Sequence record: MG655270.1
DNA length: 64,000 nucleotides
Reading direction: 5' to 3' (one strand)
The notes under the pieces are model-generated. The model did not search any database, was not told the origin of the DNA, and worked only from the letters and a program-made list of their open reading frames with translations. Shown piece after piece: positions 11,597-16,156 of the stretch. Position 1 is the stretch's first letter, and every line of letters starts with the position of its first letter. Both the position numbers and the translations under genes were made by a program.

Positions 11597-12508
11597 ATGA
11601 GTGATTTTACTGACTTAACGAAATTGAAGACCGAATTACCACAAAACATCCAAAAGATTGATGAGCAGGATGATGTGGGTGACTTCAGCGATCTTAACGA
11701 CTACCTCATGACCATCATTCCGGATGAACGGCGTGAGCGCTTGATCGCGATCTGTCAAAACTTGAGCACCCTGCAATATCATCAAGTCCAGCCCGATGTG
11801 GATCGGTTACTGATGATGGCCAACGACGGTGAAGCGCCGTCGGTACTCGATGACTTGACCCGGTTGTTATTTGAACACGCTTATGACTTAACGAAAAACA
11901 TGGGCTTTAACTGGGCTGATGAGATTGAGTTTGATCAGCTGTTCCTGCTCGGTGATGTAATCGAAGGTGCCATGTTGATTGATGGCATGGAAGACTACGG
12001 CGACCTCTCAGCGATCCTGGATGGGGATGACTCAGTTGAAGAGAAGGTGGTGGATATCTGGGGCCTGGTGCTCGACAAAGACATGCACCATCTCTTTGAA
12101 CAGATCCAGTCCATCGAACCGGCGGTGATCAGCGGGATCAAGCAAGTCACGACCCGACCGTATGCCGAAGACGATTATGCAGATGTGCAGCGCCCACTTG
12201 AGTTCGTGGTTGAGCGGTTGGTGAAAGTCCGTGAAATGATGAAGACCGATGGCATTGCTTACCAGCATGTGGCCAAGGGCGGGGCATTAGGCGTTGAGCT
12301 CGATTCACTGATCACGCTCTACACCCCTGAGTTGAATGCCGTGACCGATCCGATCGAACTGACCGACCTGCTGGTTGCCTTTACCCTGATCAGCAACACC
12401 CCGGATGGGTTGGTGAAATCCACCGCATCCCGGTTGGCAGAAAAATGGATTGATGATATCGAAGTCATCAATGTGGTAGGTAAACATATCGACAGGTATC
12501 CCGTGTGA
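11597..12508 (+). CDS. Acidic hypothetical protein (probably virion-associated)
   Basis: 303 aa, D/E-rich, coupled (GTGA overlap) to the RNAP gene. Confidence 0.7.
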   Translation: MSDFTDLTKLKTELPQNIQKIDEQDDVGDFSDLNDYLMTIIPDERRERLIAICQNLSTLQYHQVQPDVDRLLMMANDGEAPSVLDDLTRLLFEHAYDLTKNMGFNWADEIEFDQLFLLGDVIEGAMLIDGMEDYGDLSAILDGDDSVEEKVVDIWGLVLDKDMHHLFEQIQSIEPAVISGIKQVTTRPYAEDDYADVQRPLEFVVERLVKVREMMKTDGIAYQHVAKGGALGVELDSLITLYTPELNAVTDPIELTDLLVAFTLISNTPDGLVKSTASRLAEKWIDDIEVINVVGKHIDRYPV

Positions 12509-13815
12509 ATATTCGCGACTATTTAATCATGGCCTTTCGGGCAGGGGCTTACAAGCAACGCCAGTGGGTGTTGAGTGTCATGAGTATCACCCAGACCCCG
12601 GATGGTAAATCCGTAGCAGACAGTATGATCCCGTATCAGGCACACCGCATCAACATCGGTGCGACACTCGATTGGGCTTACTGGGACGACTTCAACAAAA
12701 CCTTTGTGCCGATCGAGGGAGTGGATGTTAACTTCCCGTTGTTTCGACCCGAGGATCAATACACACTACAACCTGGGGATTTCGCCAATGTCACTGAAGA
12801 AGTTACTACTACTTTCGGCCGTATTCTGGCTAACCATTATTATTTTATCGATGTGGTCGGTGAACGTGTCCCCTTTCAGAACGTAGAATTCAACCGCGGG
12901 ATGCTGGAGAAGATCTACAAGGCCCGGGTATTAGAAGACGCCCAGGACTTGCGGCGTTCTGATCCGTTCTACCTGACCGTCGATGAATTCAAACGCTCAG
13001 TGGATAATGGTTTTGCCTTGGGTGGGTTGTCGAAACTTTGTGTACCGACTGCTTGTCCGGAAACCATGTATCCGCCGAAGTTCATCATCGAGATGCGTGA
13101 CCGTCTGTTTGAAGAACACAAGGATGAGCTCAACAATCCGGTCGTCATGGGACGTATTCAGGATGAGCTGTTAAAGCACTACCGTGAGTTCCTAATGTCC
13201 ACCCCGTCAGCCAAGTTCTTTGTGATCAAGAAGACCATCGACCAGGCCTTCAACAACATGTTCTTGACCGGTGGTATTGCGGGGGCTTTTGGCGGTAACA
13301 CTGTTATTACCAACTCGCTGTACGAAGGCTGGAACCTGAAGAACTTCCCGGCGTTAGTGAATGGCTCTATCGAAGCTTCCTTTGACCGTGGTGCAGCTAC
13401 AGCTGATGGCGGCGAGAAAGTGAAGATGTTGATCCGTGCCACGCAGAACATCCGTATCACCGATGATGATTGTGGAACTCAGCTTGGGGTGCCGTGGGTG
13501 ATTGAAGATGCCGGCAAGGCACGCTTCATTAACTCTTACATACTGGATAAGGGTGTGACGATTCTGTTAACTCCGGAGAACATTGATAAGTTCGTCGGTA
13601 AACCAGTCATGACCCGTTCACCCAGCTTCTGTAAGAAATCCCATGGCGACTCCTGTAAGTTCTGCGTCGGTGCGCATAACGCCACCAACCCACGCGGGAT
13701 GTCTTCTGGTACCTCGAAGATCGGTTCTACCCTGATGTTGTTATCGATGAAAGCGATGCATAAAGGCAGTAAGATCGATCTGATCGAGTATAACCTTGAT
13801 GAGGTCTTTAACTGA
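12505..13815 (+). CDS. Multisubunit RNA polymerase beta-prime fragment (bridge helix to trigger loop), probably virion RNAP, phiKZ gp80-like
   Basis: ATADGGEKVKMLIRATQNIRITDDDCGT (cf. RpoC region F ...EDDCGT), RSPSFC...CKFCVG Zn site, IGSTLMLLSMKAMHKG (trigger loop); synteny. Confidence 0.88.
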   Translation: MNIRDYLIMAFRAGAYKQRQWVLSVMSITQTPDGKSVADSMIPYQAHRINIGATLDWAYWDDFNKTFVPIEGVDVNFPLFRPEDQYTLQPGDFANVTEEVTTTFGRILANHYYFIDVVGERVPFQNVEFNRGMLEKIYKARVLEDAQDLRRSDPFYLTVDEFKRSVDNGFALGGLSKLCVPTACPETMYPPKFIIEMRDRLFEEHKDELNNPVVMGRIQDELLKHYREFLMSTPSAKFFVIKKTIDQAFNNMFLTGGIAGAFGGNTVITNSLYEGWNLKNFPALVNGSIEASFDRGAATADGGEKVKMLIRATQNIRITDDDCGTQLGVPWVIEDAGKARFINSYILDKGVTILLTPENIDKFVGKPVMTRSPSFCKKSHGDSCKFCVGAHNATNPRGMSSGTSKIGSTLMLLSMKAMHKGSKIDLIEYNLDEVFN

Positions 13816-13870: not shown

Positions 13871-14578
13871 ATGTATGGTCTATTGATCTTAGCACTACCC
13901 CGGTCACCGTACGTCCACATGAGTGCGATGACTGCGGACAGGTTTACTGAACTGCTCCCACAACTCCAGAAAGAGCTCGATGCAGATATCTTTCCCAACG
14001 TCTGCTTCCAAGGTGCGTTTAACGTCAGCAACACGCGTACTGTAACACCCTTGTTCATTCCGTGTAATGGTTTGGTGTCAGCACGGGAACTGGGGTATGA
14101 GCAGATTCGTAACATTCTCGCTAACCCGGAGAAAGAGATCCAACATCTCACCAACATCGGTGACTGGTTAGGTCGTCCTGGCAGGCTGATGTTTGGTGAT
14201 GATGATCAAGGTGTGTTGGTCACTGATATGTATAAGTGGCTACTGCAGGCAGGAAAGGTTCGTCTGTCATTTCGTTTCCAGCCGATCTATCTGGCCGACG
14301 TAGCAGGCGAAGTAATTCCTACCCACACCTATCCGCGTGATCATTTCTACGACCAGGTCTACCTCGATAAAGACGGTGAGCGTGCTTTCCTGTCTTACGG
14401 CTCGTGTGGTGAAGAAGGCTGTGTCATAGAACCCAGAGAAGAGAAACCCGTGCAAGTGTACGGCGTTACCTACTCGTCACTGGATGAAGTGGCCCGATGC
14501 TATAACCTGCCTGAACAGTACGTGAAAGAACGCGTTGAGTCTGACAGCCTTGAATGGCTGGAGTGGTCATATTTGTAA
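13871..14578 (+). CDS. Hypothetical protein with C-terminal NUMOD1-like HTH; paralogue of 18127..18909
   Basis: LTNIGDWL shared with 18127 ORF; C-terminal VYGVTYSSLDEVARCYNL...WLEWSYL. Confidence 0.65.
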   Translation: MYGLLILALPRSPYVHMSAMTADRFTELLPQLQKELDADIFPNVCFQGAFNVSNTRTVTPLFIPCNGLVSARELGYEQIRNILANPEKEIQHLTNIGDWLGRPGRLMFGDDDQGVLVTDMYKWLLQAGKVRLSFRFQPIYLADVAGEVIPTHTYPRDHFYDQVYLDKDGERAFLSYGSCGEEGCVIEPREEKPVQVYGVTYSSLDEVARCYNLPEQYVKERVESDSLEWLEWSYL

Positions 14579-14706
14579 AAGTATTTGGGGATGAGACGCA
14601 GAGCTGATTCCCATCTACGGTAAGTTGTTCAAGGAAGCAGCAAACCGGTTATAAAAAATGAAAGGGTTTTCGTAAGATAGTCAGTGCTCCGTACCCGAGA
14701 CAATAC

Positions 14707-14904
14707 ATGACCACAAACCCGCAGTTTATTTTCGTGGCTCAGAATTCTGATGCTACACACAGCGTAGAGAAACTGGAAGTAGGACGCGATACCGATACCC
14801 AGAAGAACCTCACGGAACTTCGTAAAGGTTTGCCGTTCGACTTCTCGTTTATCATGTCTGAAGAGGCGATCTATCAACTTCGACAGGCAGGGCACATCAA
14901 CTAA
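14707..14904 (+). CDS. Small hypothetical protein
   Basis: 65 aa, fills the gap before the Tad2-like gene. Confidence 0.5.
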   Translation: MTTNPQFIFVAQNSDATHSVEKLEVGRDTDTQKNLTELRKGLPFDFSFIMSEEAIYQLRQAGHIN

Positions 14905-14919
14905 ACTGCTGAGGTAGTC

Positions 14920-15372
14920 ATGACGAACAAATCGGAGATCTCACACGGTGGTGGTGATCAGCCTATGGAAAAAGAGCAAAGCAACTTATCCGTATTGGTG
15001 AACTACTCCACAGGTGTGATGGAAGGTGACCGTTTTAATTACTCGGTTGCATTGGCGCTGTTGAAAGACGGTATCAAAGTGAAACGCGAAGACTGGAAGA
15101 ACGCTTTCCTGGTGTTCGTCCCGGGTAGTCAGAATGTTGAACTGCCAAAAGGGTCGCCGTATGAAGTCGCACTCCACGGTAAGAAGTCCGTTGCCAATAT
15201 TCGTCCGCACATCGATCTGTACACGGAGTACGGTGAATTCGAAGTCGGTTGGACCGCCAACCAGGAAGACACCAACGCCGATGACTGGATGATTGTCTTA
15301 GACAAGAACACCAATCAAGACGACAGTGCCGACGAAGAGAAAGAGTCCTCAAACGACGACTCGAAGTCATAA
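14920..15372 (+). CDS. tad2: DUF2829/Tad2-family anti-defence sponge protein
   Basis: FNYSVALALLKDGIKVKREDWKNAFLVF...PHIDLYTEYGEFEVGWTANQEDTNADDWMIV fits the Tad2 pattern F.EAL..LK.G..V.R..W...W.PSQ.D..A.DW. Confidence 0.8.
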   Translation: MTNKSEISHGGGDQPMEKEQSNLSVLVNYSTGVMEGDRFNYSVALALLKDGIKVKREDWKNAFLVFVPGSQNVELPKGSPYEVALHGKKSVANIRPHIDLYTEYGEFEVGWTANQEDTNADDWMIVLDKNTNQDDSADEEKESSNDDSKS

Positions 15373-15377
15373 ACCCC

Positions 15378-15406
15378 AGGAGAGCTTCGGCTCTCCTTTT
15401 ATGCCC
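15378..15406 (+). terminator. cUUCGg stem-loop plus TTTATGCCC
   Basis: AGGAGAGC-TTCG-GCTCTCCT-TTTATGCCC. Confidence 0.75.
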
Positions 15407-15421
15407 ATTAAGGAACATGTC

Positions 15422-15781
15422 ATGAGTGAAAAGAAAGCGTTTGAAGTGGTATTGGATAGCCGTCATGAACCGTACGAGGCTTACCAGTTATTAGTGGCTC
15501 GCATCAATACCTTATTGCGCACCGGTCAAGGCTACCATGAAGTGAAACTCACGAAGTGGCAGCTTTACGATAACGGTCTTCTTATCAAGGGAGATGATGA
15601 TGTGCATATCTCCTTGTTGCGTCATTTCTATTACGATAAGCAACGCAATACGTTTGGTGGTGGCTTCATGGCCTTTGAGATCCTGGAAGATTTGGGTCGT
15701 TACTACAAGGTGCCCGATATCACAGAAGGGATGAGCGAGAACGTTGGCCTCGTCTTCACGGTCACGGTAACCACACCATAA
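15422..15781 (+). CDS. Hypothetical protein, tandem paralogue 1 (VKLTKW)
   Basis: AAGGA RBS before ATG 15422. Confidence 0.65.
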   Translation: MSEKKAFEVVLDSRHEPYEAYQLLVARINTLLRTGQGYHEVKLTKWQLYDNGLLIKGDDDVHISLLRHFYYDKQRNTFGGGFMAFEILEDLGRYYKVPDITEGMSENVGLVFTVTVTTP

Positions 15782-15787
15782 GAGGTT

Positions 15788-16156
15788 GTGATGAAACCAC
15801 TCTTCGCCATGAAGTTCGATACCCGGGATGCGGGATTAGGGGATCAGCTCGATCTGCTGCAATCACGGGTGAAGGCTTACTCTAAACACGGCACCATGAT
15901 CAAGGACGTGGCGGTGACGGCCTGGTTGGTCTGTTCGGATAACATGCCAGTTGCCGGTGATGACCCTGCTTATGCCAGCATTATCCACCGTTACCGTTAC
16001 GACATCGAACAGCAGTGTGTGGTCGGTGGGGTCAGTGCCATGGATGCTCTGCGTGAGATCTGGTCGGCGTATGGTCCTGACTCTACCCTCCCACCGTTCA
16101 GCCGGATACCCGGTGCTGTCGATATGCAATTTACCTTAACTGTGTTCACTATTTAA
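15788..16156 (+). CDS. Hypothetical protein, tandem paralogue 2 (VAVTAW)
   Basis: GAGG RBS, 122 aa. Confidence 0.65.
   Translation: MMKPLFAMKFDTRDAGLGDQLDLLQSRVKAYSKHGTMIKDVAVTAWLVCSDNMPVAGDDPAYASIIHRYRYDIEQQCVVGGVSAMDALREIWSAYGPDSTLPPFSRIPGAVDMQFTLTVFTI

What the first reader, a model, noticed from the sequence alone, without database searches (positions are those of the whole stretch)
14920..15372. Tad2/DUF2829 immune-signal sponge in a nucleus-forming jumbo phage
Seen: Tad2 motifs ALALLKDGIKVKREDW and WTANQEDTNADDW, plus N- and C-terminal extensions including an acidic tail. Established: Tad2 sequesters Thoeris gcADPR, and some homologues also bind cyclic dinucleotides; the phage nucleus blocks DNA-targeting defences but not nucleotide-signalling abortive systems. 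Inference: this gene complements the nucleus against signalling immunity. The W-T-A-N-Q variant of the usual W.PSQ may change ligand specificity.
Basis: partly seen in the sequence, partly recalled or inferred. Interest (0 to 1): 0.7.

Follow-up and report, generated by a model that had tools for sequence, protein, structure and literature searches.

The report
Tad2-like sponge gene, Erwinia jumbo phage
This gene of a nucleus-forming Erwinia jumbo phage encodes a genuine, expressed member of the Tad2 family of phage proteins that soak up bacterial alarm molecules, but its ligand pocket differs from the well-studied ones, so which signal it captures is open.

Summary
The ORF at 14920-15372 (+) is real. 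It is gp280 of Erwinia phage vB_EamM_Mortimer, 150 aa, deposited as "hypothetical protein". It matches Pfam PF11195 (Tad2-like/DUF2829) at 53 bits against a cut-off of 25. Its predicted core (residues ~38-128, pLDDT >=90) matches only solved Tad2 structures. The phage carries chimallin 99.3% identical to that of RAY, a proven nucleus-former. The identical RAY protein was detected by mass spectrometry.

Both Trp and the Asp of the canonical pocket are kept. The Asn after the first Trp is Lys (Asn in 114 of 149 family representatives), the loop is two residues shorter, and the Ser and Thr contacts are Asn and Glu.

Among eight orthologues, amino-acid changes concentrate in the pocket elements: 8 of 17 positions against 13 of 110 elsewhere (p=0.0014). 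The clade-specific N-terminal extension and the rest of the domain are under strong purifying selection (dN/dS 0.02-0.09).

A survey of 317 E. amylovora genomes does not mention Thoeris.

Verdict: a new, divergent-pocket member of a known sponge family, ligand unassigned, moderately interesting.

The parts
14920..15372 (+). CDS gp280 (MORTIMER_280, AUG87028.1), 150 aa, Tad2-like protein
   Evidence: ORF. Record annotation. PF11195 at 53.2 bits. The identical RAY gp273 was detected by LC-MS/MS.
14911..14914 (+). Shine-Dalgarno GAGG, 5 nt before the ATG
   Evidence: Read directly from the sequence.
14920..15027 (+). Clade-specific N-terminal extension, residues 1-36
   Evidence: Predicted disordered, with pLDDT <50 for residues 1-31. 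Under strong purifying selection, dN/dS 0.02-0.09. Not homologous to the N-terminal extensions of other long family members.
15037..15297 (+). Tad2-like (DUF2829) domain, residues 40-126
   Evidence: Pfam envelope 40-126. pLDDT >=90. All 24 Foldseek PDB hits with E<=1e-3 are Tad2 structures.
15094..15105 (+). Pocket element 1, residues W59-K60-N61-A62 (beta1-beta2 loop)
   Evidence: Equivalent to SPO1 W25/N26 and HgmTad2 W21/N22/G23. Family counts: W in 148 of 149, Asn at position 60 in 114 of 149 (Lys in 7), Gly at position 61 in 114 of 149. A further two-residue stretch present in about 130 of 149 is absent here.
15250..15288 (+). Pocket element 2, residues 111-123 (loop plus helix alpha3), with W111, N114, E116, D117, D122, W123
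   Evidence: Equivalent to SPO1 W73/S76/T78/D79 and HgmTad2 W87/L88/S90/T92/D93. Family counts: Ser at position 114 in 120 of 149 (Asn in 8); Thr/Ala/Ser at position 116 in 112 of 149 (Glu in 13); D117 in 149 of 149. Seven of the 13 positions vary among orthologues.
15301..15369 (+). Acidic low-complexity tail, residues 128-150
   Evidence: 9 Asp/Glu against 3 Lys. pLDDT <50. Variable in length and sequence among orthologues, whose proteins are 139-150 aa in total.
15378..15402 (+). Intrinsic-terminator-like hairpin (8-bp stem, UUCG loop) plus U-tract
   Evidence: -16.3 kcal/mol, z -4.86. The consensus scan missed it.
14707..14904 (+). gp279, a 65-aa ORF 15 nt upstream; usual but not obligatory neighbour
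   Evidence: phrog_11788; no Pfam or NCBIfam match. It lies 15 nt upstream of the Tad2-like gene in Mortimer, AH06 and five metagenomic contigs. One related lineage has it without a Tad2-like gene.

Best explanation
gp280 is a member of the Tad2-like (DUF2829) family of phage 'sponge' proteins. Like its solved relatives, it most likely assembles into a homo-oligomer. It is most likely made in quantity in the infected cell's cytoplasm. There it would bind and sequester a small nucleotide-derived alarm molecule made by a host signalling defence, so the defence's effector is never switched on. That would cover a class of immunity which the chimallin shell does not address.

Shown: family membership, predicted fold, retention of all family-wide near-invariant residues, expression at protein level, purifying selection, and the nucleus-forming genome background.

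Inferred: oligomerisation, sequestration, cytoplasmic site, and anti-defence role.

The canonical inter-protomer pocket is remodelled in this lineage: Lys for the phosphate-contacting Asn, a shorter loop, Asn for Ser and Glu for Thr. It is also the fastest-evolving part of the protein among orthologues. The ligand is therefore probably not bound in the way SPO1 Tad2 binds 3'cADPR. It may be a different ADPR-derived or cyclic-nucleotide signal, or the site may have been tuned to the signals of Erwinia or Pantoea hosts.
For: Family and fold:
- PF11195 at 53.2 bits against a cut-off of 25.
- Sequence hits to solved SptTad2, ModTad2, SPO1 Tad2 and HgmTad2.
- AF2 core with pLDDT >=90.
- Foldseek finds only Tad2 structures at E<=1e-3, with target-normalised TM up to 0.88, then a jump to E 0.4.
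- All ten near-invariant family columns are kept: A44, G51, R56, W59, H97, D99, W111, D117, D122, W123.

Expression and selection:
- The identical protein was detected by LC-MS/MS in a RAY lysate, among about 44 detected proteins.
- There are 0 amino-acid changes against 2-6 synonymous ones in 7 of 8 genus comparisons. Against AH06, gp280 is the best-conserved gene of the block together with gp279.
- dN/dS is 0.02-0.09 outside the pocket elements.

Pocket:
- Pocket-element dN is about 10-fold higher than in the rest of the domain.
- Variable sites cluster there: 8 of 17 against 13 of 110, p=0.0014.
- Five of six Mortimer-lineage-specific changes fall there, P=1.3e-4.

Literature:
- The family has a proven wide ligand range: 3'cADPR, His-ADPR, N7-cADPR, cyclic dinucleotides, cUMP/cCMP.
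- phiKZ Tad1 is a precedent in a nucleus-forming phage.

Distribution:
- Presence/absence polymorphism at a syntenic locus, as expected of an accessory counter-defence gene.
Against: - No binding or activity data exist for this protein or any close relative.
- About a quarter of the sponge homologues tested (19 of 84) inhibited none of seven signalling systems.
- Two of the five polar contacts defined in solved complexes are replaced, plus the Gly next to the Asn.
- The oligomeric state could not be modelled with the tools available.
- The published E. amylovora defence survey does not mention Thoeris. It names CBASS_I and Pycsar only in correlation lists, apparently as rare systems.
- The elevated dN in the pocket is also what relaxed constraint on a disused site would give.
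- dS over 17 codons is not estimable, so positive selection is not demonstrated.
Confidence: 0.55

Rival explanations
1. One reading: a canonical anti-Thoeris sponge that sequesters 1''-3' gcADPR (3'cADPR) in the same pocket and manner as SPO1 Tad2.
For: W59, W111 and D117 supply the stacking contacts and the key Asp in SPO1 and HgmTad2, and all three are conserved. Li et al. estimate that only about 1% of short Tad2 proteins are predicted non-functional for gcADPR binding. Some orthologues keep the Asn after the first Trp and the Ser. Lys60 could still contact phosphates (inference).
Against: K60 replaces the Asn; the double mutant that includes this Asn abolishes binding in HgmTad2. The loop is two residues shorter, and N114 and E116 replace the Ser and Thr contacts. 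ModTad2 shows that a Tad2 with an even more canonical pocket can fail against type I Thoeris. Thoeris is not mentioned among the defence systems of 317 E. amylovora genomes.
Confidence: 0.2
2. The Tad2 fold has been re-used for something other than small-molecule sequestration. For example, it could bind a host or phage protein through the strictly conserved, disordered N-terminal extension and the acidic tail, while the old pocket decays.
For: The N-terminal extension is clade-specific, predicted disordered, yet nearly invariant with dN/dS 0.02-0.09. That pattern is typical of a linear interaction motif. The pocket elements are the least constrained part of the domain. A DUF2829 protein was once reported as the anti-CRISPR AcrIIA7.
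Against: All family-wide near-invariant residues that frame the pocket are retained in every orthologue: W59, W111, D117, D122, W123. The AcrIIA7 activity could not be reproduced. No non-sponge function is documented for the family.
Confidence: 0.15
3. A decaying or functionless remnant of a Tad2 gene.
For: Non-canonical pocket residues. The gene is absent from one related lineage.
Against: The reading frame is intact in all 8 orthologue DNAs, with low dN/dS. The protein is detected by mass spectrometry. The gene has its own Shine-Dalgarno and terminator.
Confidence: 0.03

Closest known systems
ModTad2 / MoTad2 (Myoviroides odoratus is not meant: Myroides odoratus prophage Tad2; PDB 8V3E, 9EIB)
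   Same: Best structural superposition: target-normalised TM 0.79-0.88, rmsd 1.3-3.0 A, 30-33% identity. Sequence E 3e-5. Similar domain length. It is a family member that does not inhibit type I Thoeris, showing that specificity shifts within the fold.
   Different: ModTad2 keeps the Asn-Gly after the first Trp and the Ser in the second motif (alignment). It has no N-terminal extension or acidic tail. Its ligands, His-ADPR and cUMP/cCMP, are known. Here the ligand is unknown.
SptTad2 (PDB 8WJD) and HgmTad2/AcrIIA7 (PDB 8KBI-8KBM, 8WJC)
   Same: Best sequence hit (1.1e-5) and best Foldseek E-values (2e-7 to 4e-7). Same two-Trp/Asp framework.
   Different: These proteins have a longer beta2-beta5 insertion: 41 residues in HgmTad2 against about 29 here and 24 in SPO1. 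That insertion builds the second, cyclic-dinucleotide pocket. They have the canonical Asn-Gly and Ser/Thr contacts. They are bare domains of about 100 aa.
SPO1 Tad2 (gp34.65; PDB 8SME/8SMF/8SMG, 8WJE)
   Same: Founding member of the family with the same fold (Foldseek E 4e-6 to 4e-5). W25, W73 and D79 have equivalents at W59, W111 and D117.
   Different: Only a weak direct sequence match, E 0.35. SPO1's N26, S76 and T78 correspond to K60, N114 and E116 here. SPO1 Tad2 is 89 aa with no extensions, comes from a Bacillus phage, and has 3'cADPR binding demonstrated.
phiKZ Tad1
   Same: Functional analogue by context: a signal-sequestering protein encoded by a nucleus-forming jumbo phage. A 2026 review called it the only anti-defence protein described in jumbo phages.
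   Different: An unrelated fold and family. It is reported to be injected with the virion. Here there is only detection in a crude lysate, which says nothing about packaging.

Membership tests
Tad2-like / DUF2829 (Pfam PF11195) | Profile match above the curated gathering score | tested here: met
   53.2 bits against 25, E 4.6e-14, residues 40-126 covering profile positions 2-73 of 73.
Tad2-like / DUF2829 (Pfam PF11195) | Fold: N-terminal helix, antiparallel beta-sheet, short C-terminal helix, superposable on solved Tad2 structures | tested here: met
   AF2 model with pLDDT >=90 over ~38-128, with elements H41-49, five strands and H115-119. All 24 PDB matches with E<=1e-3 are Tad2 structures. 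This is a prediction, not a solved structure.
Tad2-like / DUF2829 (Pfam PF11195) | Family-wide near-invariant residues (>=90% of 150 aligned sequences) | tested here: met
   A44, G51, R56, W59, H97, D99, W111, D117, D122 and W123 are all present.
Tad2-like / DUF2829 (Pfam PF11195) | Homotetramer made of two V-shaped dimers | not testable with these tools
   Only monomer prediction was available. The architecture is described.
gcADPR-sequestering Tad2 (SPO1 type, anti-type I Thoeris) | Two stacking Trp plus the Asp that contacts the ribose hydroxyls | tested here: met
   W59, W111 and D117 are present.
gcADPR-sequestering Tad2 (SPO1 type, anti-type I Thoeris) | Asn (and Gly) directly after the first Trp, contacting the diphosphate from both protomers | tested here: not met
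   K60 and N61 are found here. Asn is present at position 60 in 114 of 149 representatives and Gly at position 61 in 114 of 149. The loop is two residues shorter than in about 130 of 149. The contacts are described.
gcADPR-sequestering Tad2 (SPO1 type, anti-type I Thoeris) | Ser and Thr in the second motif (SPO1 S76/T78; HgmTad2 S90/T92) | tested here: not met
   N114 is found here (Ser in 120 of 149, Asn in 8). E116 is found here (Thr/Ala/Ser in 112 of 149, Glu in 13).
gcADPR-sequestering Tad2 (SPO1 type, anti-type I Thoeris) | Binds 3'cADPR and a cognate Thoeris system exists in the host range | tested here: inconclusive
   Binding is not testable here. The text of a DefenseFinder survey of 317 E. 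amylovora genomes does not mention Thoeris. Its tables were not available, and Pantoea hosts were not surveyed.
Cyclic-nucleotide-binding Tad2 (second pocket: HgmTad2, SptTad2, MoTad2) | Extended insertion after beta2 that forms a cavity within the V-shaped dimer | tested here: inconclusive
   The insertion is about 29 residues (68-96). That lies between SPO1 (24) and HgmTad2 (41). It is nearly invariant among orthologues, with 4 variable positions in residues 64-110. The cavity itself cannot be assessed without a multimer model.
AcrIIA7-type anti-CRISPR | Inhibition of Cas9 | not testable with these tools
   Same Pfam domain, with a weak hit to 8KBI and 9KZR. The activity was not reproducible.
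Chimalliviridae (nucleus-forming jumbo phages), genome context | Encodes chimallin; close relative shown to build a nuclear shell | tested here: met
   Mortimer record 184182-186314 is 99.3% identical to RAY gp222. RAY ChmA forms a ring enclosing DNA. Both are the same species, Agricanvirus ray. The gene lies outside the window.

The most novel reading that the evidence does not exclude
The Agricanvirus Tad2-like protein has a new ligand specificity. In this reading, its canonical pocket has been re-shaped lineage by lineage to capture an immune signal of Erwinia or Pantoea that is not among those assigned to Tad2 proteins so far. Three pocket types were seen: one each for the E. amylovora phages and the E. 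billingiae phage AH06, and a third on contigs of unknown host. The conserved disordered N-terminal extension would then add a second function, such as closing the pocket or directing the protein to a place or partner. As with ModTad2 and His-ADPR, the protein could then serve as a handle to identify an unknown signalling molecule.
Probability: 0.25. Interest if true: 0.65.

Novelty: new member of a known kind. Interest (0 to 1): 0.4.

Why it matters
Nucleus-forming phages are shielded from DNA-targeting defences, but not from defences that sense infection and signal with small molecules. A 2026 review names only Tad1 of phiKZ as a described jumbo-phage counter-defence protein. A Tad2-family protein that is expressed, tightly conserved and restricted to one chimallivirus genus extends that picture to a second sponge family and to a plant-pathogen host. 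Its pocket differs between host lineages. That makes it a natural series for learning how sponge specificity evolves, and possibly for finding the signal used by an Erwinia or Pantoea defence. It also bears on choosing and interpreting phages for fire-blight biocontrol. The domain hit itself is routine: the 2014 Ea35-70 record already notes DUF2829.

Tried and rejected
1. Upstream-ORF fusion. phrog_1048 aligns the protein to profile positions 66-210 of 211, and the upstream ORF is 65 aa. I suspected a split or fused gene. Rejected: the upstream ORF is its own family, phrog_11788, full length.

2. '100% protein identity despite 91-94% DNA identity'. This was wrong. The gene's own DNA is 98.7-99.6% identical in the genus, and the regional divergence comes from gp278 and gp282.

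3. gp279-gp280 as an obligatory pair. Rejected: one related lineage has gp279 without a Tad2-like gene.

4. Fold of gp279. The AF2 model was too poor (pLDDT 61.8, pTM 0.30), so no fold search was run.

5. Neighbouring genes. Pfam found nothing for ten neighbours. NCBIfam found nothing for gp279 or gp280.

6. Promoters. The sigma-70 scan gave no more sites than shuffles did, and these phages use their own RNA polymerases.

7. Prior catalogue entries. The supplementary tables of the sponge-diversity preprint hold no Erwinia or accession match. The supplements of the AntiDefenseFinder and E. amylovora pangenome papers are not held.

8. N-terminal extension shared with other long Tad2-like proteins. 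It is not alignable.

9. Cyclic-dinucleotide contacts. I could not map HgmTad2's contacts residue by residue. The direct alignment covers only residues 75-126 at E 0.38.

I left that sequence out and sent it nowhere else.

Full report
OBSERVATION

The window is the last 64 kb of Erwinia phage vB_EamM_Mortimer (MG655270.1, 273,914 bp; species Agricanvirus ray). The 2.8 kb around the finding match that record at 100% identity. Window position 1 corresponds to record position 209915.

The ORF at 14920-15372 (+) exists and encodes 150 aa. It is MORTIMER_280 (gp280), deposited as "hypothetical protein".
- A GAGG Shine-Dalgarno lies 5 nt upstream of the ATG.
- An 8-bp UUCG-loop hairpin followed by a U-tract lies directly downstream (-16.3 kcal/mol, z -4.9). 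The consensus terminator scan missed it.
- The N-terminal extension (1-36) and an acidic tail (128-150; 9 Asp/Glu against 3 Lys) are also present.

FAMILY AND FOLD

- Pfam PF11195 (Tad2-like, formerly DUF2829) matches residues 40-126 over the whole profile, at 53.2 bits against a gathering score of 25.
- PHROGs places the protein in phrog_1048, function unknown.
- A sequence search of the PDB returns named Tad2 proteins: SptTad2 (1e-5), ModTad2 (3e-5), and weakly SPO1 gp34.65 and HgmTad2/AcrIIA7.
- An exhaustive HMMER search of 1.84 billion representatives finds 324 relatives at E<=0.001. Only one of them is above 50% identity, so the Agricanvirus protein sits in an isolated clade.
- An AlphaFold2 model built on 150 aligned sequences is confident for residues ~38-128 (pLDDT >=90). 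It is disordered at residues 1-31 and 130-150.
- Foldseek against the PDB returns 24 hits at E<=1e-3, and all of them are Tad2 structures. The best superposition is on ModTad2 (target-normalised TM 0.79-0.88). The next hit has E 0.4.

Membership of the Tad2-like family is therefore established by profile and by predicted fold.

GENOME BACKGROUND

RAY belongs to the same species. It was shown experimentally to enclose its DNA in a chimallin ring, with gp222 as ChmA. Mortimer carries that gene at 99.3% nucleotide identity, outside the window. The gene next but two upstream of the finding is one of the split RNA polymerase subunits. "Nucleus-forming jumbo phage" is therefore supported by close homology.

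IS THE GENE USED?

- The RAY orthologue gp273 is identical in amino-acid sequence. It was detected by LC-MS/MS in a crude RAY lysate at 18.7% coverage, among about 44 detected proteins out of roughly 320 predicted (PMC6690015 Table 3). A crude lysate does not tell whether the protein is in the virion.
- Within the genus, the gene has 0 amino-acid changes against 2-6 synonymous changes in seven of eight comparisons. The eighth has one change, in the tail.
- Against phage AH06 (host E. billingiae), gp279 and gp280 are the best-conserved genes of the block. They are 85% and 84% identical in nucleotides, against 42-70% for gp278, gp281, gp282 and gp283. Whole-gene dN/dS is 0.15.

THE POCKET

Published complexes define the canonical inter-protomer site.
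- In SPO1 Tad2: W25, N26, W73, S76, T78, D79.
- In HgmTad2: W21, N22, G23, W87, L88, S90, T92, D93. The W21A/N22A and S90A/T92A/D93A mutants lose binding.

By motif spacing these residues map to W59, K60, N61 and to W111, T112, N114, E116, D117. The table gives the counts among 149 family representatives, none of which is a close orthologue.

| Position in gp280 | Residue here | Counts among 149 representatives |
|---|---|---|
| 59 | W | W 148 |
| 60 | K | N 114, K 7 |
| 61 | N | G 114, N 8 |
| after 62 | absent | a two-residue stretch present in about 130 |
| 111 | W | W 148 |
| 113 | A | A 105, P 38 |
| 114 | N | S 120, N 8 |
| 116 | E | T, A or S 112 in total, E 13 |
| 117 | D | D 149 |

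The aromatic and Asp framework is therefore intact, but the polar contacts to the phosphates and the adenine side are replaced. About 70% of representatives have the canonical combination. This protein belongs to a heterogeneous minority.

Asn for Ser is rare, but Ala at position 113 is the majority state. The larger change, in the first loop, was missed.

EVOLUTION OF THE POCKET

I collected eight orthologue DNAs:
- Mortimer
- AH06
- an IMG/VR 287-kb contig
- a JGI contig
- four Logan contigs

Residues 1-127 align without gaps. Of these, 21 positions vary. Eight of the 21 fall in the 17 positions of the two pocket elements (59-62 and 111-123), against 13 of 110 elsewhere (Fisher one-sided p=0.0014). 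Of the eight contact positions fixed in advance, four vary (p=0.025).

Five of the six substitutions unique to the E. amylovora-phage lineage lie in the pocket elements (P=1.3e-4). So do four of the eight unique to AH06 (P=0.011).

dN in the pocket elements is 0.24-0.35 in comparisons with Mortimer, against 0.024-0.036 in the rest of the domain. dS cannot be estimated on 17 codons, so this shows a roughly ten-fold local excess of replacement. It does not prove positive selection.

Three pocket types are seen. Some orthologues keep the Asn after the first Trp and the Ser. The Mortimer type differs from the family's commonest states at the most positions.

By contrast, the N-terminal extension has dN/dS 0.02-0.09. 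It is not alignable to the extensions of other long family members. The tail varies in length and sequence.

LOCUS

The order is the same in all Tad2-bearing relatives: RNA polymerase subunit, a variable gene, the 65-aa gp279, a 15-nt spacer, then the Tad2-like gene.

One related lineage is different (a 225-kb contig and four others). It has gp279 followed directly by the next gene, with no Tad2-like gene, and it has an HD_4-domain gene in place of gp278. The Tad2-like gene is thus an accessory gene at a variable locus, which is typical of counter-defence genes.

At E<=1e-5, no other Erwinia phage in the 50,697-record collection has a homologue. The only other record above 200 kb is a Vibrio phage. 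AntiDefenseFinder is reported to find only Tad1 in phiKZ.

WHAT IT MOST LIKELY DOES

The family's documented activity is stoichiometric sequestration of immune signals by a homotetramer.
- One interface binds 3'cADPR, 2'cADPR, His-ADPR or N7-cADPR.
- A second interface, built by the insertion, binds cyclic dinucleotides or cUMP/cCMP.

Specificity shifts within the fold, and 19 of 84 tested sponge homologues hit none of seven systems.

I commit to the following reading, at about 0.55. gp280 is an abundant sponge for a nucleotide-derived host signal, and it complements the nuclear shell as phiKZ Tad1 does. Its canonical site is remodelled, so the ligand is unassigned.

The rivals are:
- a re-used fold acting through the conserved N-terminal extension (about 0.15);
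- a functionless remnant, contradicted by selection and proteomics (about 0.03).

The DefenseFinder survey of 317 E. amylovora genomes does not mention Thoeris in its text. It names CBASS_I and Pycsar only in correlation lists. Its tables were not available. These phages also plate on Pantoea.

NOVELTY

The DUF2829 hit is already noted in the 2014 Ea35-70 record. Any current Pfam-based pipeline would call the domain Tad2-like. I found no paper that discusses a Tad2-family protein in a nucleus-forming phage. This is a new member of a known kind. It has a divergent, fast-evolving pocket and a clade-specific constrained extension.

PROCEDURAL NOTES

- While judging the insertion, I looked at the consensus line that align_proteins printed by itself. 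Nothing in this report rests on that line. All conservation statements come from per-column counts or from the tool's list of near-invariant columns.
That sequence was dropped and was not sent anywhere else.

Noticed in passing
window 14707-14904 (+): gp279 is a 65-aa ORF (phrog_11788, no Pfam or NCBIfam match). It lies exactly 15 nt upstream of the Tad2-like gene in all Tad2-bearing relatives, and it is as strongly conserved as gp280 (0-1 aa changes in the genus). One related lineage has it without the Tad2-like gene. Its function is unknown, and the AF2 model is too poor to search with (pLDDT 61.8).
   Followed up: partly
window ~14685-14706 (+): A roughly 20-nt element directly upstream of the gp279 start codon is invariant or nearly so in Mortimer, AH06 and two Logan contigs. 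The rest of the spacer is unalignable, and in AH06 the spacer is only 26 nt. It could be a ribosome-binding or regulatory element, or a phage-polymerase promoter.
   Followed up: no
window 13871-14578 (+): Mortimer's gp278 is a divergent allele: 235 aa against 238 aa, and about 82% nt identity to every other genus member (dS 0.5-0.7). The adjacent gp279 and gp280 are 99-100% identical. This is a mosaic or recombination boundary next to the Tad2-like gene.
   Followed up: partly
window 15422-15781 and 15791-16156 (+): gp281 and gp282 are tandem paralogues, both phrog_6658. gp282 exists as two very different alleles within the genus: 74% nt identity to Mortimer in MadMel, Ea35-70 and Desertfox, against 96-97% in the others.
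   Followed up: no
L022:850-1470 (+), also L023: In the related phage lineage that lacks the Tad2-like gene, the gp278 position is occupied by a 206-aa protein with a Pfam HD_4 (PF13328) hit. This phosphohydrolase-type domain might itself act on nucleotide signals.
   Followed up: no
window 12505-13815 (+): gp277 is annotated as an RNA polymerase beta/beta' fragment in the records, but it has no Pfam hit at E<=0.01. This illustrates how divergent the split chimallivirus polymerases are.
   Followed up: no
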